Source: Malacoraja senta (Eukaryota). Taken from it: 64,000 nucleotides of DNA. Of this stretch, positions 14,809 to 58,700 are shown piece after piece. A model generated the notes under the pieces. It did not search any database. It was not told where the DNA came from and saw only the letters and a list, made by a program, of their open reading frames with translations. Numbering within the stretch: position 1 is the first letter of the stretch; the number at the start of each line of letters is the position of its first letter. Both the position numbers and the translations under genes were made by a program. The stretch covers positions 9,176,001-9,240,000 of the forward strand of contig CM075980.1 in NCBI GenBank assembly GCA_038087875.1. Direction: 5' to 3'.

Positions 14809-17041
14809 GTAGGTGTGAGCTATCCTTTGTCCATGCAATTATTGTTATGTGGCTCCTCCTTGCCCCCCCCCCCTCACAATTTCTCCCCCATTTTAATTTC
14901 TTATGACACTAAAGTGAATTTTCTACACCAAATTTGAACAGTCCACATTTCTTGATGCTGCTTTATTTCTTCCACTTTTAGACTATTAATGGAATTAACA
15001 TAATAAAGTTATCACAAACTCAGATTGACCCATTAAATAGACCTCTCTCATCAAGTAATTAAGTACAGCTCTCATTCTTCAATAAACAGTTTATGACAGC
15101 ATAAGGGAAAAACAGTTGTTAGTTGCACAGTACGTTATTTTTCTTCAACATTTTGAAATTGAACACTTTTCCCTTGGATTGGATTTGACCAGGCATGAGT
15201 CACCTTTGTGCCAATGATGTGATTTTAACCCATGGGACGCATGGGATGACTTCATTCCCATTGCAATGCTATTGTAGAAGCATTGTAAAAAATCAGAGCA
15301 CATTGTAACAGGAGTAACCATTAGTGAGCACAGCTGGGGCAGCTTGCGCTTCTCAGCACAGTGCCAGACTGGATCTTCTGCCAGATAAGTGAAAACTTGC
15401 CCACATGCTTCCGACTGTGCTGCACCTATGAATCCCCAGACCTCCAACACGACTGCAATCCCTGCCCAGAAACTCATCCTCTTTACCCCCCCCCCCCCCC
15501 CCCACAATATGTTAGCTTCCTGACCCTTCCTAAACACTGCCAATCTTGCCATTTTCCCTTCCCTCTCCACTGTCTGTCAATACCAGATTCAAATGTTTCT
15601 TATTCCTCCCAGAGCATGAAGCATACTGGTGGGTAGATTTCATTCTCAAAATAGGTATTAGTTAAGAGCTGCTATCTACCACAATTTATTTGAAAAAGTT
15701 TCTTGAAACTCTTCTTGACGTAGTTGCAGTTCCCTTAGTTTCTGTAAAAAAAAAAATGTTTTTAATGTTTTTGGCACATATGCTGTTTTGTGTCATTTAG
15801 AAGTATTTCTTCTAGATGACACATTGGGGTTATGAGGTGGAGAATTTTTCTTTAATGTCTTGCAGTCATGATAAAATGTAACTGATATTTTGTACACAAA
15901 ATAATGGGAGTACATTGAATGTTGTGCAATTTTAAATTATTGTGGTCCCACTATGACACATCTGGGAATATGACTTAGTGTGTTGTAGGGCTAATCATGG
16001 CTCATTTGGCCATAAATGGCATTTAAGAGACTTTGAATTCTGAACAGAATCTTAACAGATTGAAATATACTGAATCATCTGCCAGTTTTTATCTCTGAAT
16101 TTAGTATTATTTTCCACTGAGTCATTCAGAACAGCGTAGTTCCATTATAGAACAGAGTTGAACTCAAAACAACTTGGCATTATTGCCAGTATCCAGGAAG
16201 AACATTCCTCCTTTGAAATTACACTTTAATTCCCTAGAATGGAATTCTAGCAGGGCTGTCAAGTGTTTCCTTCTGGGCATGTGATGCACCCAAGAATATA
16301 TTTTGTTGGCAAGCGAAATAAATAAATTGATGCATTGCTACAATGAATGAGTGATCTCCAACTAAATTCCCTGCAATGAAATAATTTGCAGCAGAGGGAT
16401 TTTGAGCACAACTTCCATTGTAATTGAAAGCAGTGATAATTTAGTTTTATGATTGCTGGTGTGACAAGTGTTTGGATCTTCTGAACCTTGTGTCAACTTG
16501 AGTCTTTGTGAATGGGGGAAGGGATGTAAGCAAAATGGAACGTGAAAGTACTGCCAAGAGTCGAAGGGGATTTTTCTGCTGATTAGTCTGGCTTCTAAAA
16601 TCTTGAGAGATGCCTCTTAAAAATAGCGGAGTCAGCGGATATGCGGAGAAGGCAGGAACGGGGTGCTGATTGGGAATGATCAGCCATGATCACATTGAAT
16701 GGCGGTGCTGGATCGAAGGGCCGAATGGCCTACTCCTGCACCTATTGTCTATTGTCTATTGAAATCTTTTTTTCAGTAATAAAGAAGACAGTGAATATTA
16801 TGTGGATTAATTCCTAGAAGGTAGTTGATAAAGGCGGCAAATAAGACATTATAAAAAGTTGAGGCAAATAACATTTAAAAGAACGTCAATAGACTCAAAA
16901 TGCTGGAGTAACTTAGCGGGACAGGCAGCATCTATGGAGAGAAAGAATGGGTGACGTTTTGGGTCGAGGCCCTTCTTCAGACAAAAGAATGTAATCTTGA
17001 GGCTGTGAGAATATATTTTTTCATATTCCAAAGGAGTAGGT

Positions 17042-21739: not shown

Positions 21740-21879
21740 CTTCCCCAACAAAACAAAGTCCTCAGAACCTTCACCGATCATCATGACTGCCTCACTCGGC
21801 AGTAATCTCTCTGAATTGGATCGTCTCTTGTTGGAACTGAATGAGGTGCAACACAATCCATCTAGCAGCTTTGCAACAG
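21740..21879 (+). CDS. PXN: Paxillin exon 4 (LD2), GC donor
   Basis: Acceptor ctgcag; (S)FPNKTKSSEPSPIIMTASLGSNLSELDRLLLELNEVQHNPSSSFAT; donor CAG|gcaagt gives the phase 1 needed by the next exon. Confidence 0.95.
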
Positions 21880-22340
21880 GCAAGTACTGAATATAACACG
21901 GTCTTCCATAAAACAGAATCCAATTCTTTCCAAAAACCTTGTTTCAATGCAGTGGGAAAGGAAGTAATTTTTTTCATTTGCATTTTCTCCTTTCCTCCAT
22001 ACTAAGAATGGAGAGAGTACAGATTTAAAAGGCCACTTTTAGAATTTAACAGACACATTTATATTCTTGTGTGATTTACTTGTGGGACTGTACATTCTGA
22101 AATCCCTGAGGAATTGAAATAAATGTTTGAAAATTTAGAGTAGCCCGCAGTCTGTGTTTGGATTTAATCTCGTTATTTGTTTTGGGGCATTGCTGAAGTA
22201 ATATGGATCTAAAACTTATAAGATAATATTTCTGAAATAAACATGTCAACACATCAGATTTGTTTTCTTCCTTGCTTATCCTCCTCATGTGAAAGGGATA
22301 GGTCAGATGGCTGGTTTGCAGAATTTTCCAATGCTGAACA

Positions 22341-27565: not shown

Positions 27566-27713
27566 TCCGGCATCTGCTGCGTCTCCAGTGGGTGGGCTTA
27601 CCTCTCAGCGCGGCACTCCAAACCAACAACAGGCACGCATATCTGCATCCTCAGCAACCCGTGAACTTGATGAATTAATGGAATCACTCTCTGAGTTCAA
27701 GGTTCACGGCAAT
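27566..27713 (+). CDS. PXN: Paxillin exon 6 (LD4)
   Basis: Acceptor ctccttttcag; ...QQQARISASSATRELDELMESLSEFKVHGN; donor AAT|gtgagt, with a weaker in-frame alternative AAG|gttcac after 27701. Confidence 0.94.
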
Positions 27714-28695
27714 GTGAGTGCAATCAGATTTTTGCCTTTATCTGAGCCCATTAATTGAAATCACGAGCCCGATGAAAGCATTTGCCTCATTGGCAACTGT
27801 GCATTTATCTATGCTGCTAAGGTGGTGTAACAAGCAGGAAATGCTTCTTGTCAAAGAAATGGGAAAGTGGTCAGGAAAATAATCTTGGAGAAAATATCTG
27901 AAATTAGTCTTGTGTGGTTATTTACTGAAGCAAAGTGTTACTAAAATACTATATGAAAAATGCACCATCTAGATCTCCCTGTTGGAAAATAGTCAGGAAT
28001 ATTTTACCTTCCTATGAAGAGAATATGTTGGATGCAGAAGCTTCATAAAATTATTGTGTTATAACTGGAGTTCGCATTGGAAAAGTAGTCAATGTATTGG
28101 GTTTTCGTTACTATCTTTATATCAGTGCTTTTTCAAGATTACTATCTGGCTTGAAATCAGATGAACTATTAAAAGTATTTGTATGGGAAATCGTGCTGTA
28201 CTTTTTGCACAGATCACTTTTTTAGATAACGGGGGTAACACAGGTGAGCAAATAGTAAAGAGGGATACCAATAATGCAAATACAGATTGGATGGAAAATG
28301 CATATCAAGAGATGTAAACTTGAGGTGAGATAAATATACTTGTGACATTGGAGTTGTGTGTTGTAGCATGGGATGTGAGCTGTGGGGAAAACAGACATAC
28401 AGTGATCATGTATGAGATATTGATTAATCACAGTTGCCAGTTTGGATGGAATGGGATAGCGTTGGGTGTTGGAGGAATGAATTTGTGCGAGTAGCTGAGA
28501 ATCATGTGCTGGATGGATGATGAATATTAGAGAAATTTGGTTGTTGGTCAGGCAAGGCAGATATTGAATAATAAGATAAATGGAATTGGTATGAAACTGA
28601 AATAAATAATTTAAATCTTTATTTATTTCCTACCTTATTTGTTTTTTTTTATCATTTTTTCTATTCTTTCTGTCACTTTTCCTTCCTCAATTTAG

Positions 28696-29676
28696 GCTGG
28701 TACTATAAGTCCTATAAGTTTTGAATCAGATGAAAAGCAGAAAACATCTACTCCAAATACTCTGCTAGTGTCTGTTCTTACCCAATCTCCCATATCTCCA
28801 CCAACATCTCAGATGCTCTTATCTGTGCCTTACAATTCCCAGATTATTCCTAAAGGTACATGCTTGCCCTCTCCACTACCAAGAACCCACAGTCCTCTGG
28901 AACTGCTGCACATTGACGAGGAGCCTGGTACAGCACAACCATATCTATCTGCATTATCTAATCTTGCAAATTCATCACTTCACCGACCAGTGGTGCATCC
29001 ATCTGTCAATGTAAATTCAAAACTAGACACCAATGTTCCTCTGGCAGGAATGTCACCCTATTTTAAATCTCCAGAGCCATATATCACCACGCTCAGGGAC
29101 GTGCAGAAAACTGGAAATAAAAAAGAATCTATTGACAGTGAAATGCTGTCAAATGCTTTAAATACCGCAAAAAAAGATTCTAAATCCGCACTGACCTCAA
29201 GTCGTGGATTGGAGGATGTTGATAAATCCCTGATTACAGACTTTTCTGGGATCAATGAAGCCTTAGATAAGCTGCTGTCCTTTTACCATGAGGCTGAGCT
29301 AGTTGAGCCCCTGGACACCAAGCAACATGTCCTTGAATCGAAAGTGGCATCTGTGGAGAAACCATCAGTGTGTTTTCCTACGACAGAGCGTTCCTCCTTG
29401 CAATTGGAAACAAATGAGAAACAGAATATTAAACAAGCAGCCAAGCCTCGGGGAGAAAATTCAACAGAATTATCTAGTCCAAAGAAGATGCATGAAAAAG
29501 CAGCGCAACTAACAACACAGCAGCAGCAAGAACAAGGCAGGGAAATGGCAGTGGAACAAAATAAAGTGAACAGTTGTTACAAGTATCATCAAACAAATGA
29601 GAAAGCAGAAGAAGAGAAGTTTGATTTGCCTCCAGTTCAAATACTCACAGTGGAACGGATTTCTGCCTCTCGTCAG
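28696..29676 (+). CDS. PXN: Paxillin long-isoform alternative exon A (327 codons, Ser/Pro/Glu-rich)
   Basis: Very long polypyrimidine tract and tttag acceptor; 981-nt open frame in phase 0; ends TVERISASRQ, resembling the human long-isoform ERISTSGQ (recalled); putative donor CAG|gcaggc. Confidence 0.8.
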
Positions 29677-30669
29677 GCAGGCAGAAAGCTTGAATGTTGA
29701 ATGCTTTGTAGAGATTTGCTGCATGAACACCTTTGCATGGTCAGGAGAGCAATAAATACAATGTTTAAAATACTGTTGCCAGCTTTATACATCTAACAAT
29801 ACCCATTTTAATGGCATTATTGGTAGATATTTTGTGGAAGTGGCGGTGTGATGAACACTGAAGTGATTGCAGTACTTTCTAATCTCATTAATAAGGCAAA
29901 GTCTGTTGACACTGACACTTTTAATTATTACCATGGACCGCCTGATATGCACTCTGGAACAGGCTATATATATATATATATTCTTGGCACTAGGACATAT
30001 GGTTCAAAAGGCAGAAAAAGCATTTCTCAGTGCAAGTTAAATTATTTGGCACCATTTGATTGTAATTATGCACTTTATGGGAAGCAGACAAATAAAAAAC
30101 CTTGTATAATGCACAAGATCTGACCTCAGGAGGCCCATTGACATCATGCCAGAGATCACTTTGATATGCCATTGGCTCCCCTCAAATTGCATCTTTTGGA
30201 TTTGTTTCCAAGCCAGTATGTTGTGGAATTCATAACATCCTAGCCTTTAACAGGATTTGATTAGAAGGGTAAAACACAAAGTGCTGGAGGAGTTCAGTGG
30301 GTCAGGCAGCACCTATGGAGGGATTGGACAGACGGCGTTTTGGGTCAGGAACTTCTTCAGACCCTTCTTGATTAGAAGGGTTGTCATTATATTAAGAGAA
30401 ATGGAAGAGTTACGCCATAAGAGCCTTTTTGCCTGGACCTTAATACCTTCATAGCTGCCTCACGTTTATGTGCATTAACACTAAAAAATGTGCACCTTTT
30501 CTGTGAACTTGTACAGCATCGTACATGGAAATTTTCCAATTTAACTTGAGACTGCATGATAACTGATTTGTTGAGTGAAATTACTGCATGTGAAAGGTGT
30601 ATCGGTGTAAGTGCTTCTTGTTTGCTCTCAGATCTGTGGTTTCACTATGCAATCTTCCCTGTGGTGCAG

Positions 30670-30933
30670 ATGAAATCTCTTATTAAGAGGACAAAGCATT
30701 CTATGAACGTGCACCCGATGTACCGTGAGGACTTACCACGTCGAAAGTTTGGACCCGTCATATTTAACAAAAACGTGTCACAAGATAGACTTATTGAAGA
30801 ACTGCACAGCAAGCTAGGAATTGAGAAGAAGGAACCCAAGAATAGAAAAGTAGATGACTGGCTGACAGAGGGGTTGATCATCACCTCAATGCCTGTCAGG
30901 AAACATCAGGAAGGAGGTCATATTGTTGAGAAG
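30670..30933 (+). CDS. PXN: Paxillin long-isoform alternative exon B (88 codons)
   Basis: Acceptor gtgcag; MKSLIKRTK..VHPMYRE..SQDRLIEELHSKLGI..DWLTEGLIIT..GGHIVEK resembles the human long-isoform HPMSRE..SQERLIAELQGRLGI..DWLTEGV (recalled); donor AAG|gtagct. Confidence 0.88.
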
Positions 30934-31934
30934 GTAGCTAGGGGAAAGCATGAACTGTTGTTACAAAGAATTGCATGAAGATTTGATGCAAAAAGAAAAC
31001 CTATCTTAATAACTACTGCATGGATTGTTTAACACTTTTTCAAGATTCTAATCTTTAGGTTCAGTTGGCAATGCTCTAGCTTGAACAGGAATGAGCCCAT
31101 TGCAATTAAGCTGAAATATTGGCTACTATGAGATTATTTGCTTCAGAAAGATAGAAAGTAGAGAATGTTGTGCTTGATTTGATGGTAATCGTGCTGTGTC
31201 ATTGTAGCTACACTTGGATTGTATCGTTGTGCTCACCCATGGATGTATGTAGACTGCAGTTGGGGCGAATTGCAGATGTTTCTCGTCACTTTGTGCTACT
31301 CATTGCTCTCACAAGTTTAAGTTTCCCATTTTGCAAAAGTGCATAACAAGTTTTGGAGCATGTTTTTAGGGGATTGTGACACTTTGTGATATTTTGTGGG
31401 TTTGCTTAAAGGTTGTCCAGTTTATTTGTATTGTTGCGTGGTCTGCATGCATATTTCAATTATTTTGTTATTTTGGAGACATTAGCTCTGCGTAATTGTT
31501 TGCAGCTAATGTCCACATATTGGATATATGTGGCATAAAATTGGTGATTATGCATCCATCATTTTCCATAGTAATAATTAGATTTTAAGTTTTTTGTTCT
31601 GTCAATCTATGACATGCCAAGGTTTTGCCATTGGCTGGAAAGCTAAAACTAACCTTTGTTTGCAAATGACGCAGCTAAATGGTCCATAAGATCTGACTGC
31701 CCTTGCGCTATCAATTATAACTTGTGTTTGAAGATTGCAGTAAGCTTTAAGATTTCTCTGATTGTACATTGCACATTCCTTGAGTGTTGCTGAGCTCTGA
31801 TTCCCCCCCCCCCCCCCATCAAACCGTTTGCCCAATAGCTTAAAGCATGATGCACTTTGGCCTGTATAAATAAAAAAATATCCCTTAAGTATGTCAGCTT
31901 CTTAAAACTAAAGCTGCTGTATGTTTCTCTCCAG

Positions 31935-32567
31935 ATAATAATCACTCCAGAACCTCCTTCTTCAAAGGGTTCTACTCCATCACCCTGTCCTCCTTCACCC
32001 TCTCCCCCTATAAAACAGTGCCAAGAACAAAAGAAAAAAGGACTGATAGACGTCACACTTACACCACCTCCACCTGAGCGTTTCCCACCCTCACTTGCTG
32101 TACCTTCACCACCTCCCCTTCCTGTGCCTTTCCCACCTCCTCTCCCTGAACCTTCCCCAGCCCCTCTCTCTAAGCCTTCTCTGCCGCCTCTCCCTGAGCC
32201 TTCCCTCCCTCCTCCCCCTCTACCTCGCCCACCACCTCTACTTCTGCCCTCCTCATCAACTGCTTCCTCCCCATTATCTTCCATTCGCCTAGGATCTCAT
32301 TCTGCACCTCAGTGGAATATTTCATCTGATAAAAATGAAAAACTGCCTGTCCTTCCAACAGCAGTTCTTGCCCCCGTGACCCCATTAGAATACACTTCGC
32401 TACCAGAACACCATCCACGTTCCTCCTCTCTACCTGTCGTACAGACCACTGTTGTACGCGCTGAGCCTCTGCCATCTCTATCTGCATCTCCCAGAATCAT
32501 GATGTCAATAGCTTGTCAAACCGATGGTGAAGTCAGTGATGAAGGCACTCTACTTGTTCGATCACAG
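31935..32567 (+). CDS. PXN: Paxillin long-isoform alternative exon C (211 codons, proline-rich)
   Basis: Acceptor tttctctccag; phase 0; polyproline repeats followed by MMSIACQTD (human MRSVGCQTD, recalled); putative donor CAG|gcatgg, after which the sequence becomes AT-rich intron. Confidence 0.8.
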
Positions 32568-34055
32568 GCATGGAGTATTCTATCTTTAATATTTATAATT
32601 TTTGAAATCTATTTCATTTATAAAATAATCCTGAAGTTTCATCTTCATTTTCATATCCTTTGTGTACTTTGCTCAGTTTGGAACTACATAATCTTTTTAA
32701 ATAAGAAAATACTTGTAAGTATCCTGACATGTAGAATTGTTGCAGAAGGACATTTCTCTATGTTTAACTATAATTCCAGCATGAAACTATTGACCCATTT
32801 TGATGTTCACTTGCCACTATTATGCAGATCACCATGGATTATGATGACTGCCGTGGTAAGTGTAATTAAACTTGACTGTTGGCAGGAAATTTACATATTG
32901 ATTATGTGTAAAAGGGAGCTGGCTGCTTTCAGTCTAAATGTGCCAATAAAGAGTATAGTTATATATATTTTTGAAGGTCAGAATAGAATTTGCTTGAGTT
33001 GGATTCCTTGATTGCCCAATAAATTGCATCGTATTACATAGTAATATACTCGCAACAATGAGAGGCCCAGATGTGATCCTTGAGTTTCTGATTTACATCA
33101 ATGTATTAGATTCAAATGTTAGTCAACTTTGAAGTTATTTCACTAGCTATTCATTTAAGATGTTACATGAAAGTACATATTGGCTCTAATAATCTTTAAC
33201 TACAAGTGTCAGTTAGTAAAGGCACAGCTGGTGGTAGTTATCAGATAAAACGGTCAATATAATCATTTTTTAATAACAAATCTGTATGTTTGCCATCCCT
33301 GAGGAAAAAAGTACCCAGCATCTGAAATTAATGATTTGGTGCATGGAACAATTACATTAAAAAATTGTTAAATGCATTAAATACACTTAGTAGGGTACAC
33401 TAAGTATTGTTTTGTTTGATATAAAATTACATTATCAAGCTATTTGTTTTATGAAATACTTTCCTCACAATCTAACTGCTGCATGTTGATATTTAATACT
33501 GTAGATTTCTGTCAATGGGCGTATAGTTTTCTTCTCAAAAGCTCATATGTCTGTTTGTACACAGAAGTTGCGTGTTTGTTGCAATTTTCATTTTCTCTGA
33601 AGGTATGTGCAGTGCTTATCCGTCTTTCAAGAAGTCAGGTACTCATTGTTCTCTGCATGCTGCTTCAGTTGTCAAACTAGAGTCAGCTATTAGTACTATT
33701 ACTTAATTTCTTGGACGTGGACCTTGTACAGTACAGTACTTAATTTCTTGGATGTGGACCTGGCGATCAATAGAATGGGCCATTCGCAGTCTCAAATCTT
33801 TCTTCATTCATTCTGTTTATCGCTTGAAAACCATAATCTTTTCTATTTAATATTAAAAATGAACTTGAAATGGAACGTGCTTCAAGTTTTGGAAACCTGT
33901 ATATGCCATAGAATGCCCTTGCAGATTTATCTGCAAAAAGATGCAATGCAGATGTTGTTTGGAATGAAGCTTACAATGGTTACTGATTTGTTTTGAGTTA
34001 CTATATCATAACTACCTGCACAATCAAATAACTATCAAAAATAAGTCATTACATG

Positions 34056-35603: not shown

Positions 35604-35672
35604 CCAATCAGCCCAGGTCGTGCTACCAAACTGCTGGGTTCCCCATTGCATAAAGGAGATCATCTGGGACTG
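35604..35672 (+). CDS. Candidate 69-nt in-frame exon (PISPGRATKLLGSPLHKGDHLGL) at the position of the beta/gamma insert
   Basis: Long pyrimidine-rich run ending ttttag; 23 codons with no stop; weak donor CTG|gtagat; phase 0/0. Confidence 0.35.
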
Positions 35673-36129
35673 GTAGATCCATTTGCCCTTCCCCCACTGC
35701 CGTGCCCACCCCCTCCTTCATTTTATGGACAACAACAAAAACCAAAAGCAAATGTGTGTATATGAATGAACCAATGGTTCAAATTGAAACAGTAAATGAA
35801 AGCTGTTATCCACAAAGTTTAATATTTCATATGTTCTCTATGATTGCCTTTTTTAAGTAATAGACTGATAATAACAGTAATTACATAAGTGTGGTGTAAT
35901 AATCTGTCAATTTTCTTTGTTCTCAATTGTTAATACTGTGTGATTTTAGGAGAAAAAAATTGGGTTAGATATTTGGATGTCAAGTAAATGAATCACAATT
36001 AAGTGTTTATTATTTTGCCCTGCAGTAATCTCATTACAAGTATTTTGTTTGGTTGCAGTAGGGTAACTTGAATTTTTCTATTATATAATAGTTTCTTAAT
36101 TTCTTTCTAATAAAATGAAGCAAAACAAA

Positions 36130-39904: not shown

Positions 39905-40087
39905 ATGATGACCCAGTCAGGGTCCAAAGGAAAGCAAGGAGGTCCTTCCACTGTAGCAGGTCCACAAAAAGCCGGAAGCCAACTGGATAATATGTTGGAT
40001 GAATTACACGTTGGGCTGAATAAATTGGGAGTTGCGACTGTAGCAAAAGGAGTATGTGCTGCTTGCAAGAAACCTATAGCCGGACAG
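39905..40087 (+). CDS. PXN: Paxillin exon (LD5 and start of LIM1)
   Basis: Acceptor gatag; MMTQSGSKGK...GSQLDNMLDELHVGLNKLGVATVAKGVCAACKKPIAGQ; donor CAG|gtgaga; 183 nt. Confidence 0.96.
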
Positions 40088-41647: not shown

Positions 41648-43672
41648 AGCCCTGTCTCACGGTGCAAGTTGACCCACGAGGTACCCCGAGCGAAAGACTC
41701 GTGGTTGTGCATGAGATTCCAAGTGTATGATCAAGAGTTTAACCGAATTCCCACGGGTATGACTCAAGTTTGCCGTTAACTGTCATTTCTGCGATGTTCC
41801 AAGTTCGTCTCCCGAGTTAACAAGTTCCTTTCCCGAGTTACTCTTGAGCCAACCTTCAATGAAGGTCTGTTTTAATAAGCAACATCTCCATCCTGCGGCT
41901 TTGAGTTAAAGATAGAATTCAGCGCGGCCGCATCTATTGATGTGACCTACAAAGGGAAAATGCGCACCGTCCAGTGCCAGAGCAGTTATACTGATGATTT
42001 GTTTGAAACACACATCACGTAGTTAGAAGACCAGCAGGCAGAGGTTTGCTATATTTTAATTGAATTTACTGCCAGGTCTACACACTGCGGGGAGACTGGA
42101 GATGAAATCTTTGAATGTGCACGGATGCGCACATCAGATTTTTGGGAGACGGAGCTCAGGGTTCGCCTCCTGAGCTGCTTTGGTGCCCAGGCGTGAGTTG
42201 AGGTGGAGGGAGGTTGGGGGGGGGTCAGGTTAAACTCACCCATTTGACAGGCAGAGGATTACGAGGATCCAGCGAGACTCGGACTGCATGGAGAGCCGAG
42301 ACTGCCCCGCTGGTGGCCAACTTCCCCCTGTCCTCCGTCGCCGTTCCCAGCCGGCCGGCAGGAGCTGTGCATGGAGCCCGCCACCGGAGTCGTGTCTGAC
42401 TGCCTGGGCAGCCTGAGGGAGGCAGATGCACCCTGCCCGGGGAGAGGCCGCGGAGAGACTGCGGGGGGAGTACCTCACTCTGACTGTGATAGGGAGAGAC
42501 ATAGGCGCACACACACACACACACAGTGTGGAGTTCCTCTGACTGACTGACTGTGTGTGGGTGTGGGGGGTGGGACAGAGAGAGAGAGAGAGACACACAC
42601 ACACAGGCAGCGTGGAGTACCTTTAACTGTGTGTGGGAGAGAGAGACAGAGGCAGACACACACACACAATGGGCAGTGTGTACCTCAGTCTGTGTGTGTG
42701 TGTAGGGGAGAGAGAGACACAGAGACAGTGTGGACCTCTGACTGTGTATGAAGGAGAGAGGGGGAGAGAGGCACAGAGGCAGTGTGGTGTACTTTGGCGT
42801 GACTGTGGGGGAGAGAGAAAGAGCGCACAGGACCTCGGTCTATCTGTGTGTGTGGGAGGGAAGAGAGACTAAGCAGAATACATCGGTCTTATTGTGTGTG
42901 GGGAAGAAAGAGAGAGGTGGGGGGGAGAAAAAGAGAGGTGGGGGGGAAGAGAGAAATGGGGGGAGACGTATATACACACAAAGCAGAGTTTTACTGTGTA
43001 TGTGGGAGACACAGATGGACTTACACAGATGGACTTACCTCGGTCTTACTGTGTGTGGGAGGGGAGAAAAAGACGTACACTCACAGAGGCAGAGTCTCTC
43101 AGCCTGTGTGAGAGGGAGGGATGGAGAGAGAGAGATACACACACACAAGGTGGATGTGAAATCTCACCTGCCTGTTTCAGTGACTGGCACCCACCGCTAG
43201 TGAATGAAGACACCCCCATCTGTCTCCCCCTCCTCTCCCTCCACTCTCCACCCTCTCTCCTCCACCCCCCCTCCCTCTTCCAACCCCCCACTCCCCCCAA
43301 TTTGGAAATGTCATCCCATCACCCATTCCTTCTCTCCAGAGATGCTGCCTGCCCGCTGAGTTAAAGAGTTCCCACGGTAGAATCACGAGTCACTAAGGTA
43401 AACGCACGGGCCACTACGTTCTTACAACGTGTTTAAATGTTTCAAATTTTAACCTCAAGAGTACATTTTACTCGTGGAAAAGTTTAAACATGTTTGAATT
43501 TTTCCAAGAGTTAACAAGTGTCACGGGTACCTGCCGTTAGCGCCAAGAGTCGCTAAGTTGCATCCACGAGTTCCGACGTTCCCGCTACGTTAATCGTATG
43601 TGATTACCACGAGTTAAATTTGTTTTAAGCTCAGGGTACCTCGTGGGTCAGCTCGCACCGTGATACAGGGGT
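41648..43672. mobile_element. About 2-kb non-autonomous DNA transposon (Harbinger- or Kolobok-like) with simple-repeat cargo
   Basis: ~45-bp terminal inverted repeat AGCCCTGTCTCACGGTGCAAGTTGACCCACGAGGTACC...; TTAA on both flanks; reiterated subterminal CACGAG/CGAGTT motifs; (CA)n/(GA)n-rich interior. Confidence 0.82.
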
Positions 43673-49577: not shown

Positions 49578-49844
49578 GAATGTTTCACCCCATTCATAAA
49601 TGGCAGCTTTTTTGAACATGAGGGTCAGCCGTATTGCGAGATGCATTACCATGAGCGTCGCAACTCACTGTGCTCTGGATGTCAGAAGCCTATCACAGGC
49701 CGCTGTATCACTGCCATGGGAAAGAAGTTCCACCCAGAGCATTTTGTCTGTGCCTTCTGCTTGAAACAGCTCAACAAGGGCACCTTCAAAGAGCAGAATG
49801 ACAAGCCCTATTGTCACAACTGCTTTATCAAGCTCTTCTGTTAG
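49578..49844 (+). CDS. PXN: Paxillin last coding exon (LIM3 to LIM4, stop)
   Basis: [88 protein letters not shown] then TAG. Confidence 0.98.
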
Positions 49845-55769: not shown

Positions 55770-58700
55770 CTCCGTTCTTGGTGACGTATATAAATGACTT
55801 AGACATAAATGTGGATGGGTTGGTAAGTTTGCAGGCCACATCAAGATTGCTGGCATCGCGGACAGTGAATAAGGCTGTTGAAGTATACAGTGGCATGTGC
55901 AGTAGACAATAGGTGCAGGAGTAGGCCATTCGGCCCTTCGAGCCAGCATTCAATGTGATCATGGCTGATCATCCCCAATCAGTACCCCGTTCCTGCCTTC
56001 TCCCCATATCCCCTGACTCGGCAATTTTTAAGAGCCCTATCTAGCTCTCTCTTGAAAGCATCCAGAGAACCTGCCTCCACCGCACTCTGAGGCAGAGAAT
56101 TCCACAGACTCACCTCTCTCTGTGAGAAAAAGTGTTTCCTCGTCTCCGTTCTAAATGGCTTACTCCTTATTCTTAAACTGTGGCCCCTGGTTCTGGACTC
56201 CCCCAACATCGGGAGCATGTTTCCTGCCTCTAGCGTGTCCAAACCCTTAACAATCTTATATGTTTCAATGAGATTCCCTCTCATCCTTCAACTCCAGAGT
56301 GTACAAGCCCAGCTGCTCCATTCTCTCAGCATATGACATAGAAACATAGAAAATAGGTGCAGGAGTAGGCCATTCGCCCTTCGAGCCTGCACCGCCATTC
56401 AATATGATCATGGCTGATCATCCAACTCAGTATCCTGTACCTGCCTTCTCTCCATACCCCCTGATCCCTTTAGCCACAAGGGTCACATCTAACTCCCTCT
56501 TAAATATAGCCAATGAACTGGCCTCAACTACCTTCTGTGGCAGAGAATTCCACAGATTCACCACTCTCTGTGTGAAAAATGATTTTCTCATCTCGGTCCT
56601 AAAAGACTTCCCCCTTATCCTTAAACTGTGACCCCCTTGTTCTGGACTTCCCCAACATCGGGAACAATCTTCCTGCATCTAGCCTGTCCAACCCCTTAAG
56701 AATCTTGTAAGTTTCTATAAGATCCCCCCTCAATCTTCTAAATTCTAGCGATTACAAGCCGAGTCTATCCAGTCTTTCTTCATATGAAAGTCCTGCCATC
56801 CCAGGAATCAGTCTGGTGAACCTTCTCTGTACTCCCTCTATGGCAAGAATGTCTTTCCTCAGATTTGGTGACCAAAACTGTACGCAATACTGCAGGTGTG
56901 GCCTCACCAAGACCCTGTACAACTGCAGTAGAACCTCCCTGCTCTTATACTCAAATCCTTTTGCTATGAATGCTAACATACCATTCGCTTTCTTCACTGC
57001 CTGCTGCACCTGCATGCCTACTTTCAATGACTGGTGTACCATGACACCCATATCTCGTTGCATCTCCCCTTTTCCTAATCGGCCACCATTCAGATAATAA
57101 TGACAGTCCCGCCATCCTGGGAATTAACCTTGTAAACCTACGCTGCACTCCCTCAATAGCAAGAATGTCTTTCCTCAAATTAAGGGACCAAAACTGCACA
57201 CAATACTCCAGGTGTGGTCTCACTAGGGCTCTGTACAACTGCAGAAGGACCTCTTTGCTCCTATATTCGATTCCTTTTGTTTTAAAGGCCAACATGCCAT
57301 TCGTTTTCTTCATTGCCTGCTGTACCTGCATGCTTACTTTCATGGACTGATGTACAAGGACCCCCAGATCCCGCTGTACTTCCCCTTTTCCCAACTTGAC
57401 GCCATTTAGATAGTAATCTGCCTTCCTGTTTTTGCTACCAAAGTGGATAACCTCACATTTATGTGCATTAAACTTCATCTGCCATGCATCTGGCCACTCC
57501 CACAACCTGTCCAAGTCACCCTGCATTCTCATAGCATCCTCCTCACAGTTCACACTGCCACCCAGCTTTGTGTCTGCCATTCTGAAAGCGACCCGTTAAT
57601 CCCTACTCTTTGTTTCCTGTCTGCCATCCACTTCTCTATCCATGTCAGCACTCTACCCTCAATACCATGTGCCCTAATTTTGCCCACTAATCTCCTATGT
57701 GGGACCTTATCAAATGCTTTCTGAAAGTCCAGGTACACTACATCCACTGGCTCTCCCATGTCCATTTTCCTAGTTACATCTTCAAAAAATTCCAGAAGAT
57801 TAGTCAAGCATGATTTCCCCTTCGTAAATCCATGTTGACTCGGACCGATCCTGTTACTGCTATCCAAATGTTCGGCTATCTCATCTTTTATAATTGACTC
57901 CAGCATCTTCCCCACCACCGATGTCAGGCTAACTGGTCTATAATTCCCTGTTTTCTCTCTCCCGCCTTTCTTAAAAAGTGGGATAACATTAGCTACCCTC
58001 CAATCCACAGGAACTGATCCTGAGTCTATAGAACATTGGAAAATTATCACCAATGCATCCACAATTTCTAGAGCCACTTCCTTAAGTACCCTGGGATGCA
58101 AACCATCAGGCCCTGGGGATTTATCAGCCTTCAGTCCCATCAGTCTACCCAACACCATTTCCTGCCTAATGTGGATTTCCTTCAGTTCCTCCATCACCCC
58201 AGATCCTCTGGCCACTACTATATCAGGAAGATTGTTTGTGTCCTCCTTAGTGAAGACCGATTCAAAGTACCTGTTCAGTAGATCAACGACAGAATAGTTA
58301 ATTAAGCTTAATCTGAGCTAGTGCGACAAAGTACCCTTTCGGAAGTCGGATATAAAAGGAACTGGTTGATGGCAAAACACCTAACAGCACTGATGTGCAG
58401 AGAGATCTTGGGGAGAGGGCGAGTAGCTTATTGAAAGTGGCAACACAAGTAGAAAGTGGTAAATGCGTATGGCATGCTTACCTTCATTGGTTGCCGTATT
58501 GAATATCGAGTCAGGAAGTCATGATGCAGTATTTGGAGTATCGTGTGCAGTTCAGGTCGCCTCATTACAGGAAGGATGTGGAGGCTTTAGAGAGAGTGCA
58601 AAAGAGGTTAACCATAATGTTGCCTGGATTGGTGGGTTACAGCTACAAGGAGCAGTACAAAATTGTGATGTTTTCTCTGGAACACTGGAGGTTGAGGGGA

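What the first reader, a model, noticed from the sequence alone, without database searches (positions are those of the whole stretch)
28696..32567. Giant paxillin isoform: a three-exon, 626-aa cassette between LD4 and LD5
Seen: three phase-0 open exons (981, 264 and 633 nt) with good acceptors splice in frame between LD4 and LD5, roughly doubling the protein (about 561 to about 1190 aa). Recalled: the motifs ERISxSxQ, HPMxRE, SQxRLIxELxxxLG, DWLTEG and CQTD occur in the long predicted human PXN isoform, which the classical alpha/beta/gamma/delta literature does not cover. Inference: the cassette predates the split between cartilaginous and bony vertebrates and is a conserved, functionally unstudied adaptor module.
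Basis: partly seen in the sequence, partly recalled or inferred. Interest (0 to 1): 0.8.

Follow-up and report, generated by a model that had tools for sequence, protein, structure and literature searches.

The report
Extended paxillin cassette, already described

Summary
The window holds almost the whole paxillin (PXN) gene of a cartilaginous fish; its closest match is a stingray model. The three claimed exons (28696-29676, 30670-30933, 31935-32567) are open, phase 0-0, and preceded by good acceptors. Every junction matches full-length long paxillin models in stingray, sharks, chimaera, coelacanth and eel.

- The donors of exons A and C are GC, not GT. Both are conserved from chimaera to frog.
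- A fourth cassette exon lies at 35604-35753.

The novelty claim fails. Jacob et al. 2016 (PMC5091871) described zebrafish "pxnb-ins": three exons, 625 aa, between LD4 and LD5, with homology in elephant shark. PMC11216089 (2024) described rodent "ePxn", which is Rbfox1-promoted and highest in muscle and heart.

- GCATG (Rbfox) motifs are enriched and positionally conserved next to the exons.
- Only two helices are predicted in exons A and B, and both sit on LD-like motifs. The statistics for LD-likeness are weak.
- Lamprey paxillin and coelacanth and sturgeon Hic-5 carry a homologous insert.

Other first-stage notes on this same stretch had already flagged the RBFOX cluster, the GC-AG introns and an LC8-like motif.

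The parts
27567..27713 (+). LD4 exon of PXN. It ends ...EFK-VHGN|gtgagt. An upstream weak GT (AAG|GTTCAC, after 27701) would give the classical FK|MMTQ junction.
   Evidence: Pfam PF03535 at E 7e-15. Sequence. The FK+VQSN/VHGN extension is seen in long isoforms of other species.
28696..29676 (+). Cassette exon A (981 nt, 327 aa, phase 0-0), mostly disordered. Acceptor tttag|GCT; GC donor CAG|GCAGGC at 29677.
   Evidence: 62% identical to Hemitrygon P0099 residues 292-620. dN/dS 0.59 against Narcine. The GC donor is conserved in Narcine, Callorhinchus and the frog Hymenochirus.
29242..29280 (+). The only predicted helix of exon A (FSGINEALDKLLS). It carries the LD-like core LDKLL.
   Evidence: AlphaFold2 helix at residues 183-195, pLDDT about 80. 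The EALD(K/N/R)LL island is conserved from ray to teleosts.
29721..29740 (+). Two TGCATG (Rbfox-type) motifs, 45 and 59 nt downstream of exon A.
   Evidence: Matching positions in Narcine (+45), Callorhinchus (+46, +65) and frog (+32, +72).
30670..30933 (+). Cassette exon B (264 nt, 88 aa, phase 0-0), the most conserved part. GT donor AAG|gtagct.
   Evidence: 80 hits, 69 at E <= 1e-10. Exactly 264 nt in four genomes. dN/dS 0.25. 11 invariant columns in 36 sequences.
30775..30816 (+). The only predicted helix of exon B (VSQDRLIEELHSKL). It carries the LD-like core QDRLIEEL.
   Evidence: AlphaFold2 helix at residues 36-49, pLDDT 76-87. D39, I42, E44 and L45 are invariant.
30948..31023 (+). Three GCATG motifs, 15, 40 and 85 nt downstream of exon B.
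   Evidence: The same three positions occur in Narcine and Callorhinchus, and two in frog.
31935..32567 (+). Cassette exon C (633 nt, 211 aa, phase 0-0), 26% proline with many PxxP. It ends in a conserved ...SIACQTD... motif. The GC donor CAG|GCATGG at 32568 itself contains GCATG.
   Evidence: dN/dS 0.36. The donor is conserved in Narcine and Callorhinchus, and is CAG|GCAGGG in frog. Gene models of many species read through it as 'Q-A-W/G'.
32499..32525 (+). Conserved [VI]-x-[VI]-[GAS]-C-Q-T-[DE] motif, a candidate LC8 (TQT-type) site.
   Evidence: Present in every model that reaches the end of exon C, including lamprey. It is GCQVD / GCQAD in Hic-5 models. The idea comes from note s1-140954. 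Motif rules are from PMC6607443.
35604..35753 (+). Acceptor tttag|CCA; donor AAT|gtgtgt.
   Evidence: tblastn of the shark segment between exon C and LD5 gives 51-66% identity, E 6e-11 to 2e-15. It is open, with the same splice sites, in Callorhinchus. It has decayed (stops) in Narcine.
39905..40087 (+). LD5 exon (MMTQSGSKGK...LDNML...), the downstream anchor of the cassette.

Best explanation
These are alternative coding exons of the paxillin gene of a cartilaginous fish (a ray, by nearest match). They are the orthologue of the insert published as zebrafish 'Pxnb-ins' and rodent 'extended paxillin, ePxn'. Four symmetric phase-0 exons (A 981 nt, B 264, C 633, D 150) lie in the LD4-LD5 intron and can be included in combinations. 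Full inclusion roughly doubles the protein. Inclusion most likely depends on Rbfox proteins bound to clustered GCAUG motifs just downstream of exons A, B and C. These would compensate for the weak GC donors of A and C. This step is inferred from the motifs here and from the rodent minigene data. The product stays a focal-adhesion adaptor. The insert is a long disordered linker carrying a few strongly conserved islands: two short amphipathic helices that resemble LD motifs, a proline-rich tract with PxxP sites, and a terminal CQT(D/E) motif that resembles an LC8 site. It therefore probably adds docking sites in muscle-type adhesions. The docking role is inference only.
For: Junctions match exactly. 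...VERISASRQ|MKS.IKRT...VEK|IIITPE and ...Q|MMTQ/IMAQ/FMAQ are the same in the window and in full-length models of Callorhinchus, Latimeria and Anguilla. Hemitrygon P0099 runs LD4|A|B|C|LD5 with no gap, at residues 291/292, 620/621, 708/709 and 951/952. Exon B finds 80 representatives, 69 at E <= 1e-10. dN/dS against Narcine is 0.59, 0.25 and 0.36 for A, B and C, against 0.10 for LD4. RefSeq shark isoforms use the exons in combinations: B; B+D; B+C(+D); A+B; A+B+D; A+B+C+D. GCATG occurs 10 times in the 1800 nt of 300-nt flanks, against 2.0 expected (P 5e-5), and the positions are conserved in three other genomes. The GC donors are conserved from chimaera to frog. Published work supports transcripts, protein and regulation: zebrafish RT-PCR and a 130 kDa band (PMC5091871); a rodent protein band, Rbfox1 minigenes with GCATG mutants, muscle and heart expression, and focal-adhesion localisation (PMC11216089). 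AlphaFold2 gives one helix in A and one in B, both on LD-like cores.
Against: There is no transcript evidence for this species. The shark and ray isoforms are computed RefSeq models. Rbfox dependence is extrapolated from rodents and from motif counts. LD-likeness is weak: each motif meets 4 of 5 consensus positions, and LD-motif PSSM scores are not significant against shuffled cassettes (P 0.21-0.41). The CQT anchor has Cys where LC8 motifs usually have Thr/Val/Ile. In zebrafish embryos the insert isoform was not detected in the heart, so the tissue pattern may differ between lineages.
Confidence: 0.88

Rival explanations
1. The insert is essentially an inert disordered spacer. Only its length matters, for example to set the distance between the LD1-4 region and LD5 plus the LIM domains in large muscle adhesions. 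It would provide no specific docking sites.
For: Exons A and C are poorly conserved: 18-23% identity for A between ray and bony fishes, and dN/dS 0.59 and 0.36. Exon A varies from 249 to 516 aa between species. AlphaFold2 finds almost no structure. The rodent paper also calls it disordered.
Against: Exon B is 264 nt in all four genomes, with 11 invariant and 20 nearly invariant columns from lamprey to teleosts. Short islands in A (PLELLHIDEE, EALDKLL, VERISAS) and the CQT(D/E) end of C are conserved inside otherwise free-running sequence.
Confidence: 0.2
2. The open frames belong to a separate gene nested in the PXN intron, or are decaying pseudo-exons, and are not part of paxillin protein.
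For: RefSeq annotates the cassette as a stand-alone 'uncharacterized protein' in Narcine and the frog Ranitomeya, and as 'WIPF3-like' in the frog Dendropsophus. Exon D has decayed in Narcine.
Against: The stand-alone models start and end in read-through intron sequence ('...Q-A-W/G...'), which is what a pipeline produces when it misses GC donors. Full-length models join the exons to LD4 and LD5 in phase. Transcripts and protein have been shown in zebrafish and rodents. All exons are phase 0-0 and under purifying selection.
Confidence: 0.03
3. The exons are constitutive in this species rather than alternative, so the long form would be the main paxillin of rays.
For: Nothing in the sequence excludes it. 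The strong downstream donor of the LD4 exon (AAT|GTGAGT) serves the long form. The only Hemitrygon model retrieved is the long one.
Against: Two weak GC donors and dense Rbfox motifs are typical of regulated exons. Shark RefSeq models include forms that skip A, C and D in several combinations. The exons are alternative in zebrafish and rodents.
Confidence: 0.07

Closest known systems
Zebrafish Pxnb-ins (Jacob et al. 2016, PLoS One, PMC5091871)
   Same: Three alternatively spliced exons (E7-9) encode a 625-aa insert between LD4 and LD5. That paper already reported homology in gar, coelacanth and elephant shark.
   Different: A different lineage (ray versus teleost pxnb). The paper held that tetrapods had lost the insert, which the frog locus and rodent ePxn contradict. 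It does not mention the GC donors, Rbfox motifs, a fourth exon, lamprey or Hic-5.
Rodent extended paxillin, ePxn (PMC11216089, J Mol Cell Biol 2024)
   Same: An insert between LD4 and LD5 that doubles the protein (61 to 116 kDa). It has four extra exons (one large, three small), as found here once exon D is counted. Intronic GCATG sites promote inclusion through Rbfox1. The insert is predicted to be disordered.
   Different: Mammalian exon B is the most divergent (42-49% identity to the ray). Regulation and tissue pattern are untested in cartilaginous fish.
Paxillin beta and gamma isoforms
   Same: Alternative exons inserted in the same LD4-LD5 intron. In the mammal-like models they lie downstream of the CQTD exon.
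   Different: Beta and gamma are single short exons of mammals (about 34 and 48 aa, from memory) with no similarity to exons A-D. None was found in this window.
Metavinculin (muscle insert of vinculin)
   Same: A muscle-type insertion in a focal-adhesion protein, reported as co-regulated with ePxn by Rbfox1.
   Different: A single 68-aa exon (from memory) in an unrelated protein.
Hic-5 / TGFB1I1 long models of Latimeria, Acipenser and Polyodon
   Same: The Latimeria and Acipenser models carry a B-like module (E 7e-13 and 8e-4 to exon B). All three end in a GCQ(V/A)D motif at the same position, after ...SDF(K/R)VQSN and before the last LD motif.
   Different: This is a paralogous gene that falls outside the PXN clade (100/99 support). 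It has no exon A equivalent. No B-like DWLTxG signature was found in Polyodon. These are predicted models only.

Membership tests
Extended paxillin insert (Pxnb-ins / ePxn) | Lies in the intron between the LD4 and LD5 exons of a paxillin gene | tested here: met
   The LD4 exon ends at 27713 and the LD5 exon starts at 39905. The LIM exons lie downstream and the LD1-3 exons upstream.
Extended paxillin insert (Pxnb-ins / ePxn) | Several in-frame exons that add about 500-650 aa | tested here: met
   A, B and C add 327, 88 and 211 aa, and D adds 50. All are phase 0-0.
Extended paxillin insert (Pxnb-ins / ePxn) | Sequence homology to the insert of other vertebrates | tested here: met
   Exon B gives 69 hits at E <= 1e-10. 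A, B and C align to Latimeria, Anguilla, cyprinid and mammal-like long models with identical junctions. Zebrafish and rat sequences themselves were not compared.
Extended paxillin insert (Pxnb-ins / ePxn) | Alternative inclusion shown by transcripts | not testable with these tools
   No RNA data are available for this species. Only RefSeq isoform models of sharks show combinatorial use.
Extended paxillin insert (Pxnb-ins / ePxn) | Rbfox GCAUG motifs flank the exons | tested here: met
   10 motifs against 2.0 expected in 300-nt flanks (P 5e-5). Positions are conserved in three other genomes.
U2-type GC-AG introns | GC at intron positions +1/+2, with AG| before it, A at +3 and G at +5, conserved in orthologues | tested here: met
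   Exon A: CAG|GCAGGC in the window, Narcine and Callorhinchus; CAG|GCAAGC in frog. Exon C: CAG|GCATGG in the three cartilaginous fishes; CAG|GCAGGG in frog. Read-through models begin with Ala (GCN) in bichir, teleosts, frogs, lizard and koala, and with Val (GTN) in a quail.
Paxillin LD motif (LDxLLxxL) | Match to the consensus core | tested here: inconclusive
   A: L-D-K-L-L-S-F-Y, last Leu missing. B: Q-D-R-L-I-E-E-L, first Leu missing. These are the top-scoring windows of A and B with the 11-position LD PSSM, but they are not significant (P 0.21 and 0.25). With the 14-position PSSM P is 0.38-0.41 and the exon A motif is not the top window. LD.L[LM] occurs by chance in 3% of shuffled cassettes. 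The regex was designed after seeing the motifs.
Paxillin LD motif (LDxLLxxL) | Short amphipathic helix in a disordered region | tested here: met
   The only helices AlphaFold2 predicts in A (183-195) and B (36-49) coincide with the two motifs.
Paxillin LD motif (LDxLLxxL) | Binds FAT, parvin or GIT-type helical domains | not testable with these tools
   This needs peptide binding assays.
LC8 (DYNLL) TQT-type motif | Eight-residue strand in a disordered region with a [T/V/I]-Q-T anchor and P/D/E at +2 | tested here: inconclusive
   The window has M-S-I-A-C-Q-T-D. Most bony vertebrates have V-S-V-G-C-Q-T-E, against the optimal V-S-R-G-T-Q-T-E quoted in PMC6607443. Q, T(+1) and D/E(+2) fit, but Cys at -1 is not canonical. 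The motif is conserved in all models, and Hic-5 models have the QVD variant.

The most novel reading that the evidence does not exclude
The insert is an ancestral, modular docking platform of the whole paxillin/Hic-5 family. It would already have been present before PXN and TGFB1I1 diverged. It would add two extra LD-type helices and an LC8-type dimerisation site. Its inclusion would be gated by two deliberately weak GC donors, kept for over 400 million years, that need Rbfox bound at conserved GCAUG sites, one of which overlaps the exon C donor itself in cartilaginous fishes.
Probability: 0.25. Interest if true: 0.55.

Novelty: already known. Interest (0 to 1): 0.27.

Why it matters
The long paxillin form exists across vertebrates, but only two primary papers found here treat it, and it is absent from the classical alpha/beta/gamma/delta picture. 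For this window the result is mainly a correct annotation. It also explains why pipelines mis-handle the locus. The two GC donors make gene predictors read into the introns. The pipelines then split the cassette off under misleading names such as mucin-5AC-like, FLO11-like, titin-like, WIPF3-like and LIM domain-binding protein 3. The conserved GC donors, the conserved Rbfox sites and the few conserved islands give concrete targets for anyone who wants to test what the muscle-type long paxillin does.

Tried and rejected
- Pfam on exons A, B and C gave no domain, only a sub-threshold CCDC53 hit at E 0.3.
- The first literature search, on 'long isoform' and 'LD4', found nothing relevant.
- The genomic loci of Latimeria and Anguilla PXN, of Pogona and Salmo, and of a teleost with a gene over 100 kb could not be fetched. 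The tetrapod check of the GC donors therefore rests on one frog locus plus read-through protein models.
- Two LD-motif PSSMs were built to test whether the two helices are LD motifs. Neither reached significance, so they are reported only as LD-like. One exon A motif had leaked into the LD2 training set of the second PSSM.
- I asked whether exon C is split in two, as the Callorhinchus frame change and the 'three smaller exons' of rodents suggested. In the window, Narcine and frog it is one open exon. The Callorhinchus difference is a 1-nt frame shift in colinear DNA, either an indel or an assembly error. The missing fourth exon turned out to be exon D.
- No fold search was run, because both models are low-confidence outside one helix each.
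Full report
**What is in the window.**
The + strand carries nearly the whole paxillin gene. The LD1, LD2 and LD3 exons lie at about 14.6, 21.7 and 24.6 kb. The LD4 exon is at 27567-27713, and the LD5 exon starts at 39905. The LIM exons are at 41.4, 44.8 and 46.3 kb, and the last exon ends at 49844. The LD4 exon hits Pfam Paxillin at E 7e-15. There are no N runs.

The closest protein found is the 1235-aa RefSeq model of the stingray Hemitrygon akajei (P0099). It is 62% identical in exon A, 85% in B and 58% in C. Sharks are at 41-46% in exon A. The source is therefore a cartilaginous fish, most likely a ray other than Hemitrygon or Narcine.

**Check of the observation.**
The three stretches translate without stops over exactly the stated coordinates, giving 327, 88 and 211 aa. 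Each follows a pyrimidine tract and an AG.

The stop-free runs containing exons C and A are the two longest on the + strand of the 64-kb window. At the window's stop frequency, about 5e-5 and 0.03 such runs are expected by chance. Exon B is short, but it found 80 proteins among 1.84 billion representatives, 69 of them at E <= 1e-10.

- Only exon B has a GT donor. Exon A ends CAG|GCAGGC and exon C ends CAG|GCATGG.
- There is a fourth exon (see "A fourth exon" below).

**Junctions.**
Full-length long paxillins exist in the protein libraries: Latimeria P0003 (1207 aa), Anguilla P0009 (1164 aa) and Callorhinchus P0002.
- ...VERISASRQ|MKS.IKRT for A to B
- ...VEK|IIITPE for B to C
- ...Q|(M/I/F)M(T/A)Q for C to LD5

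In the stingray model the blocks LD4, A, B, C and LD5 abut without gaps, at residues 291/292, 620/621, 708/709 and 951/952.

**Selection.**
Against the electric ray Narcine bancroftii (L001), dN/dS is 0.10 for the LD4 exon. It is 0.59 for A, 0.25 for B and 0.36 for C, at dS of 0.4-0.6. All four are under purifying selection. It is weak for A and C, as expected for disordered sequence, and clear for B.

**GC donors.**
The genomic loci were Narcine (L001), the chimaera Callorhinchus milii (L002) and the frog Hymenochirus boettgeri (L003), identified. Exon A is followed by GCAGGC in the two cartilaginous fishes and by GCAAGC in the frog. Exon C is followed by GCATGG in the two cartilaginous fishes and by GCAGGG in the frog.

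Many truncated gene models of other species read through the exon C donor, and nearly all continue with Ala (GCN): '...Q-A-W' or '...Q-A-G'. Examples are bichir, teleosts, two frogs, the lizard Pogona and koala. A quail model continues with Val (GTN), which implies a GT donor there.

The two GC-AG introns are therefore old and conserved. They also explain the annotation errors. The cassette is often split off or misnamed: mucin-5AC-like, FLO11-like, titin-like, WIPF3-like, LIM domain-binding protein 3.

**A fourth exon.**
Shark long models have about 64 aa between the CQTD exon and LD5. That segment matches the window at 35604-35753, with 51-66% identity and E from 6e-11 down to 2e-15. The stretch is 150 nt, open and phase 0-0, with tttag|CCA and AAT|gtgtgt. 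Callorhinchus has the same exon with the same splice-site layout. In Narcine it has stops and no donor. This fits the "one large and three smaller exons" reported for rodents.

**Modularity.**
All four exons are multiples of three. RefSeq isoform models of sharks use them in combinations:
- B alone
- B+D
- B+C, with or without D
- A+B
- A+B+D
- A+B+C+D

The stingray model is A+B+C. These are computed models, not verified transcripts.

**Regulation.**
GCATG occurs 10 times in the 1800 nt of 300-nt intronic flanks of A, B and C, where the window-wide rate predicts 2.0 (Poisson P 5e-5). The sites lie at +45 and +59 after A, at +15, +40 and +85 after B, and at +1 after C, inside the donor itself. 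They recur at nearly the same distances in Narcine and Callorhinchus, and similarly in the frog.

Rbfox bound downstream of an exon promotes its inclusion (established knowledge). The rodent minigene work showed this for the large exon of ePxn (PMC11216089). That the same holds in a ray is inferred, not shown.

**What the insert looks like.**
No Pfam domain hits it. AlphaFold2 with alignments of 36 and 24 sequences predicts disorder apart from one helix in each exon:
- residues 36-49 in B (VSQDRLIEELHSKL, pLDDT 76-87)
- residues 183-195 in A (FSGINEALDKLLS, pLDDT about 80)

Both helices sit on the most conserved positions, and both resemble the LD consensus LDxLLxxL in 4 of 5 positions. Two PSSM tests against shuffled cassettes were not significant, with P between 0.21 and 0.41. 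I therefore call them LD-like and give the docking-helix idea about one chance in three.

Other conserved islands in A are PLELLHIDEE and VERISAS. Exon C is 26% proline with many PxxP. It ends in a motif conserved in every model, [VI]x[VI][GAS]CQT[DE]. Another first-stage note proposed this as an LC8 site. It resembles the optimal VSRGTQTE quoted in PMC6607443 but has Cys at position -1. It is untested.

**Depth of origin.**
Lamprey paxillin isoform X5 (P0100) has B-like and C-like parts, including ...VGCQTD.

Coelacanth TGFB1I1 (Hic-5, P0055) carries a B-like module and a GCQVD end at the same place, after ...SDFKVQSN. It is 45% identical to exon B, at E 7e-13. Sturgeon TGFB1I1 (P0080) has a weaker B-like module (E 8e-4) and a GCQAD end. 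The paddlefish model (P0146) shares the SDFKVQSN junction and a GCQVD end, but its B-like module was not detected.

A tree of the LIM regions puts these genes outside a PXN clade supported at 100/99. The B-C part may therefore predate the PXN/Hic-5 duplication. This rests on predicted models.

**Comparison with what is known.**
The finding is not new.
- Jacob et al. 2016 (PMC5091871) described three zebrafish pxnb exons (E7-9) encoding a 625-aa insert between LD4 and LD5. They reported RT-PCR, in situ hybridisation and a band of about 130 kDa. They also found homologous regions in gar, coelacanth and elephant shark, and concluded that the ancestral vertebrate gene had the insert. Their view that tetrapods lost it is contradicted by the frog locus here and by rodent ePxn.
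- PMC11216089 (2024) named the rodent isoform ePxn. It showed a protein band in differentiated H9C2 cells, Rbfox1 dependence, highest mRNA in skeletal muscle and heart, and localisation to focal adhesions.
- Beyond those, only two reviews mention it.

The classical beta and gamma exons lie in the same intron, downstream of the CQTD exon in mammal-like models. They are unrelated in sequence to exons A-D.

**Verdict.**
- conservation of the two GC donors and of the Rbfox site positions back to cartilaginous fishes
- the LD-like helices
- the lamprey and Hic-5 homologues

Other first-stage notes on this same stretch had already flagged the Rbfox cluster, the GC-AG introns and the LC8-like motif.

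Noticed in passing
window 21879-21885: The constitutive LD2 exon also has a GC donor (ACAG|GCAAGT), and it is conserved in Callorhinchus (L002, near 49334). The gene therefore has three GC-AG introns, as note s1-141223 says.
   Followed up: partly
window 27699-27719: The LD4 exon has two possible donors 12 nt apart: AAG|GTTCAC, then AAT|GTGAGT. Long isoforms of many species carry the 4-aa extension (VQSN / VHGN). Shark models end ...SVFN instead. Which donor the short isoform of this species uses is unknown.
   Followed up: partly
L002 (Callorhinchus) about 57360-57480: Exon C changes frame by one base relative to the window in colinear DNA, between ...YTPPPEQ and ...VLAQTIIAP. This is a real indel, an assembly error or an internal splice. 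The RefSeq model P0002 reads on in the wrong frame to a stop.
   Followed up: partly
L001 (Narcine) 15530-15720: The orthologue of exon D has stops, a frame shift and no GT donor. The exon seems to have been lost in this electric ray while it is intact in the window and in Callorhinchus.
   Followed up: yes
P0055 (Latimeria), P0080 (Acipenser), P0146 (Polyodon): Predicted long isoforms of Hic-5/TGFB1I1 carry an insert between their last two LD motifs that ends in GCQ(V/A)D. The Latimeria and Acipenser models also have a module homologous to exon B. I found no paper that mentions this.
   Followed up: partly
P0100 (Petromyzon paxillin X5) residues about 345-360: The lamprey insert contains a perfect LD consensus (AELDSLLLQL) in its C-like part, at a different place from the LD-like motifs of jawed vertebrates.
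   Followed up: no
window 55980-58215, minus strand: There are several open frames with reverse-transcriptase-like sequence (for example ...YLDFQKAFDKVPH...). These are fragments of a LINE-type retroelement downstream of the gene.
   Followed up: no
window 42200-43400: A G+C-rich (0.52) low-complexity block of TG/CA-type repeats in the intron after the LIM1 exon gives many spurious open frames on both strands.
   Followed up: no
RefSeq names: Cassette-bearing paxillin models are named mucin-5AC-like, flocculation protein FLO11-like, titin-like, KMT2D-like, WIPF3-like, proline-rich protein 36, LIM domain-binding protein 3 or 'DDB_G0284459-like'. The proline-rich exon C misleads automatic naming.
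   Followed up: no
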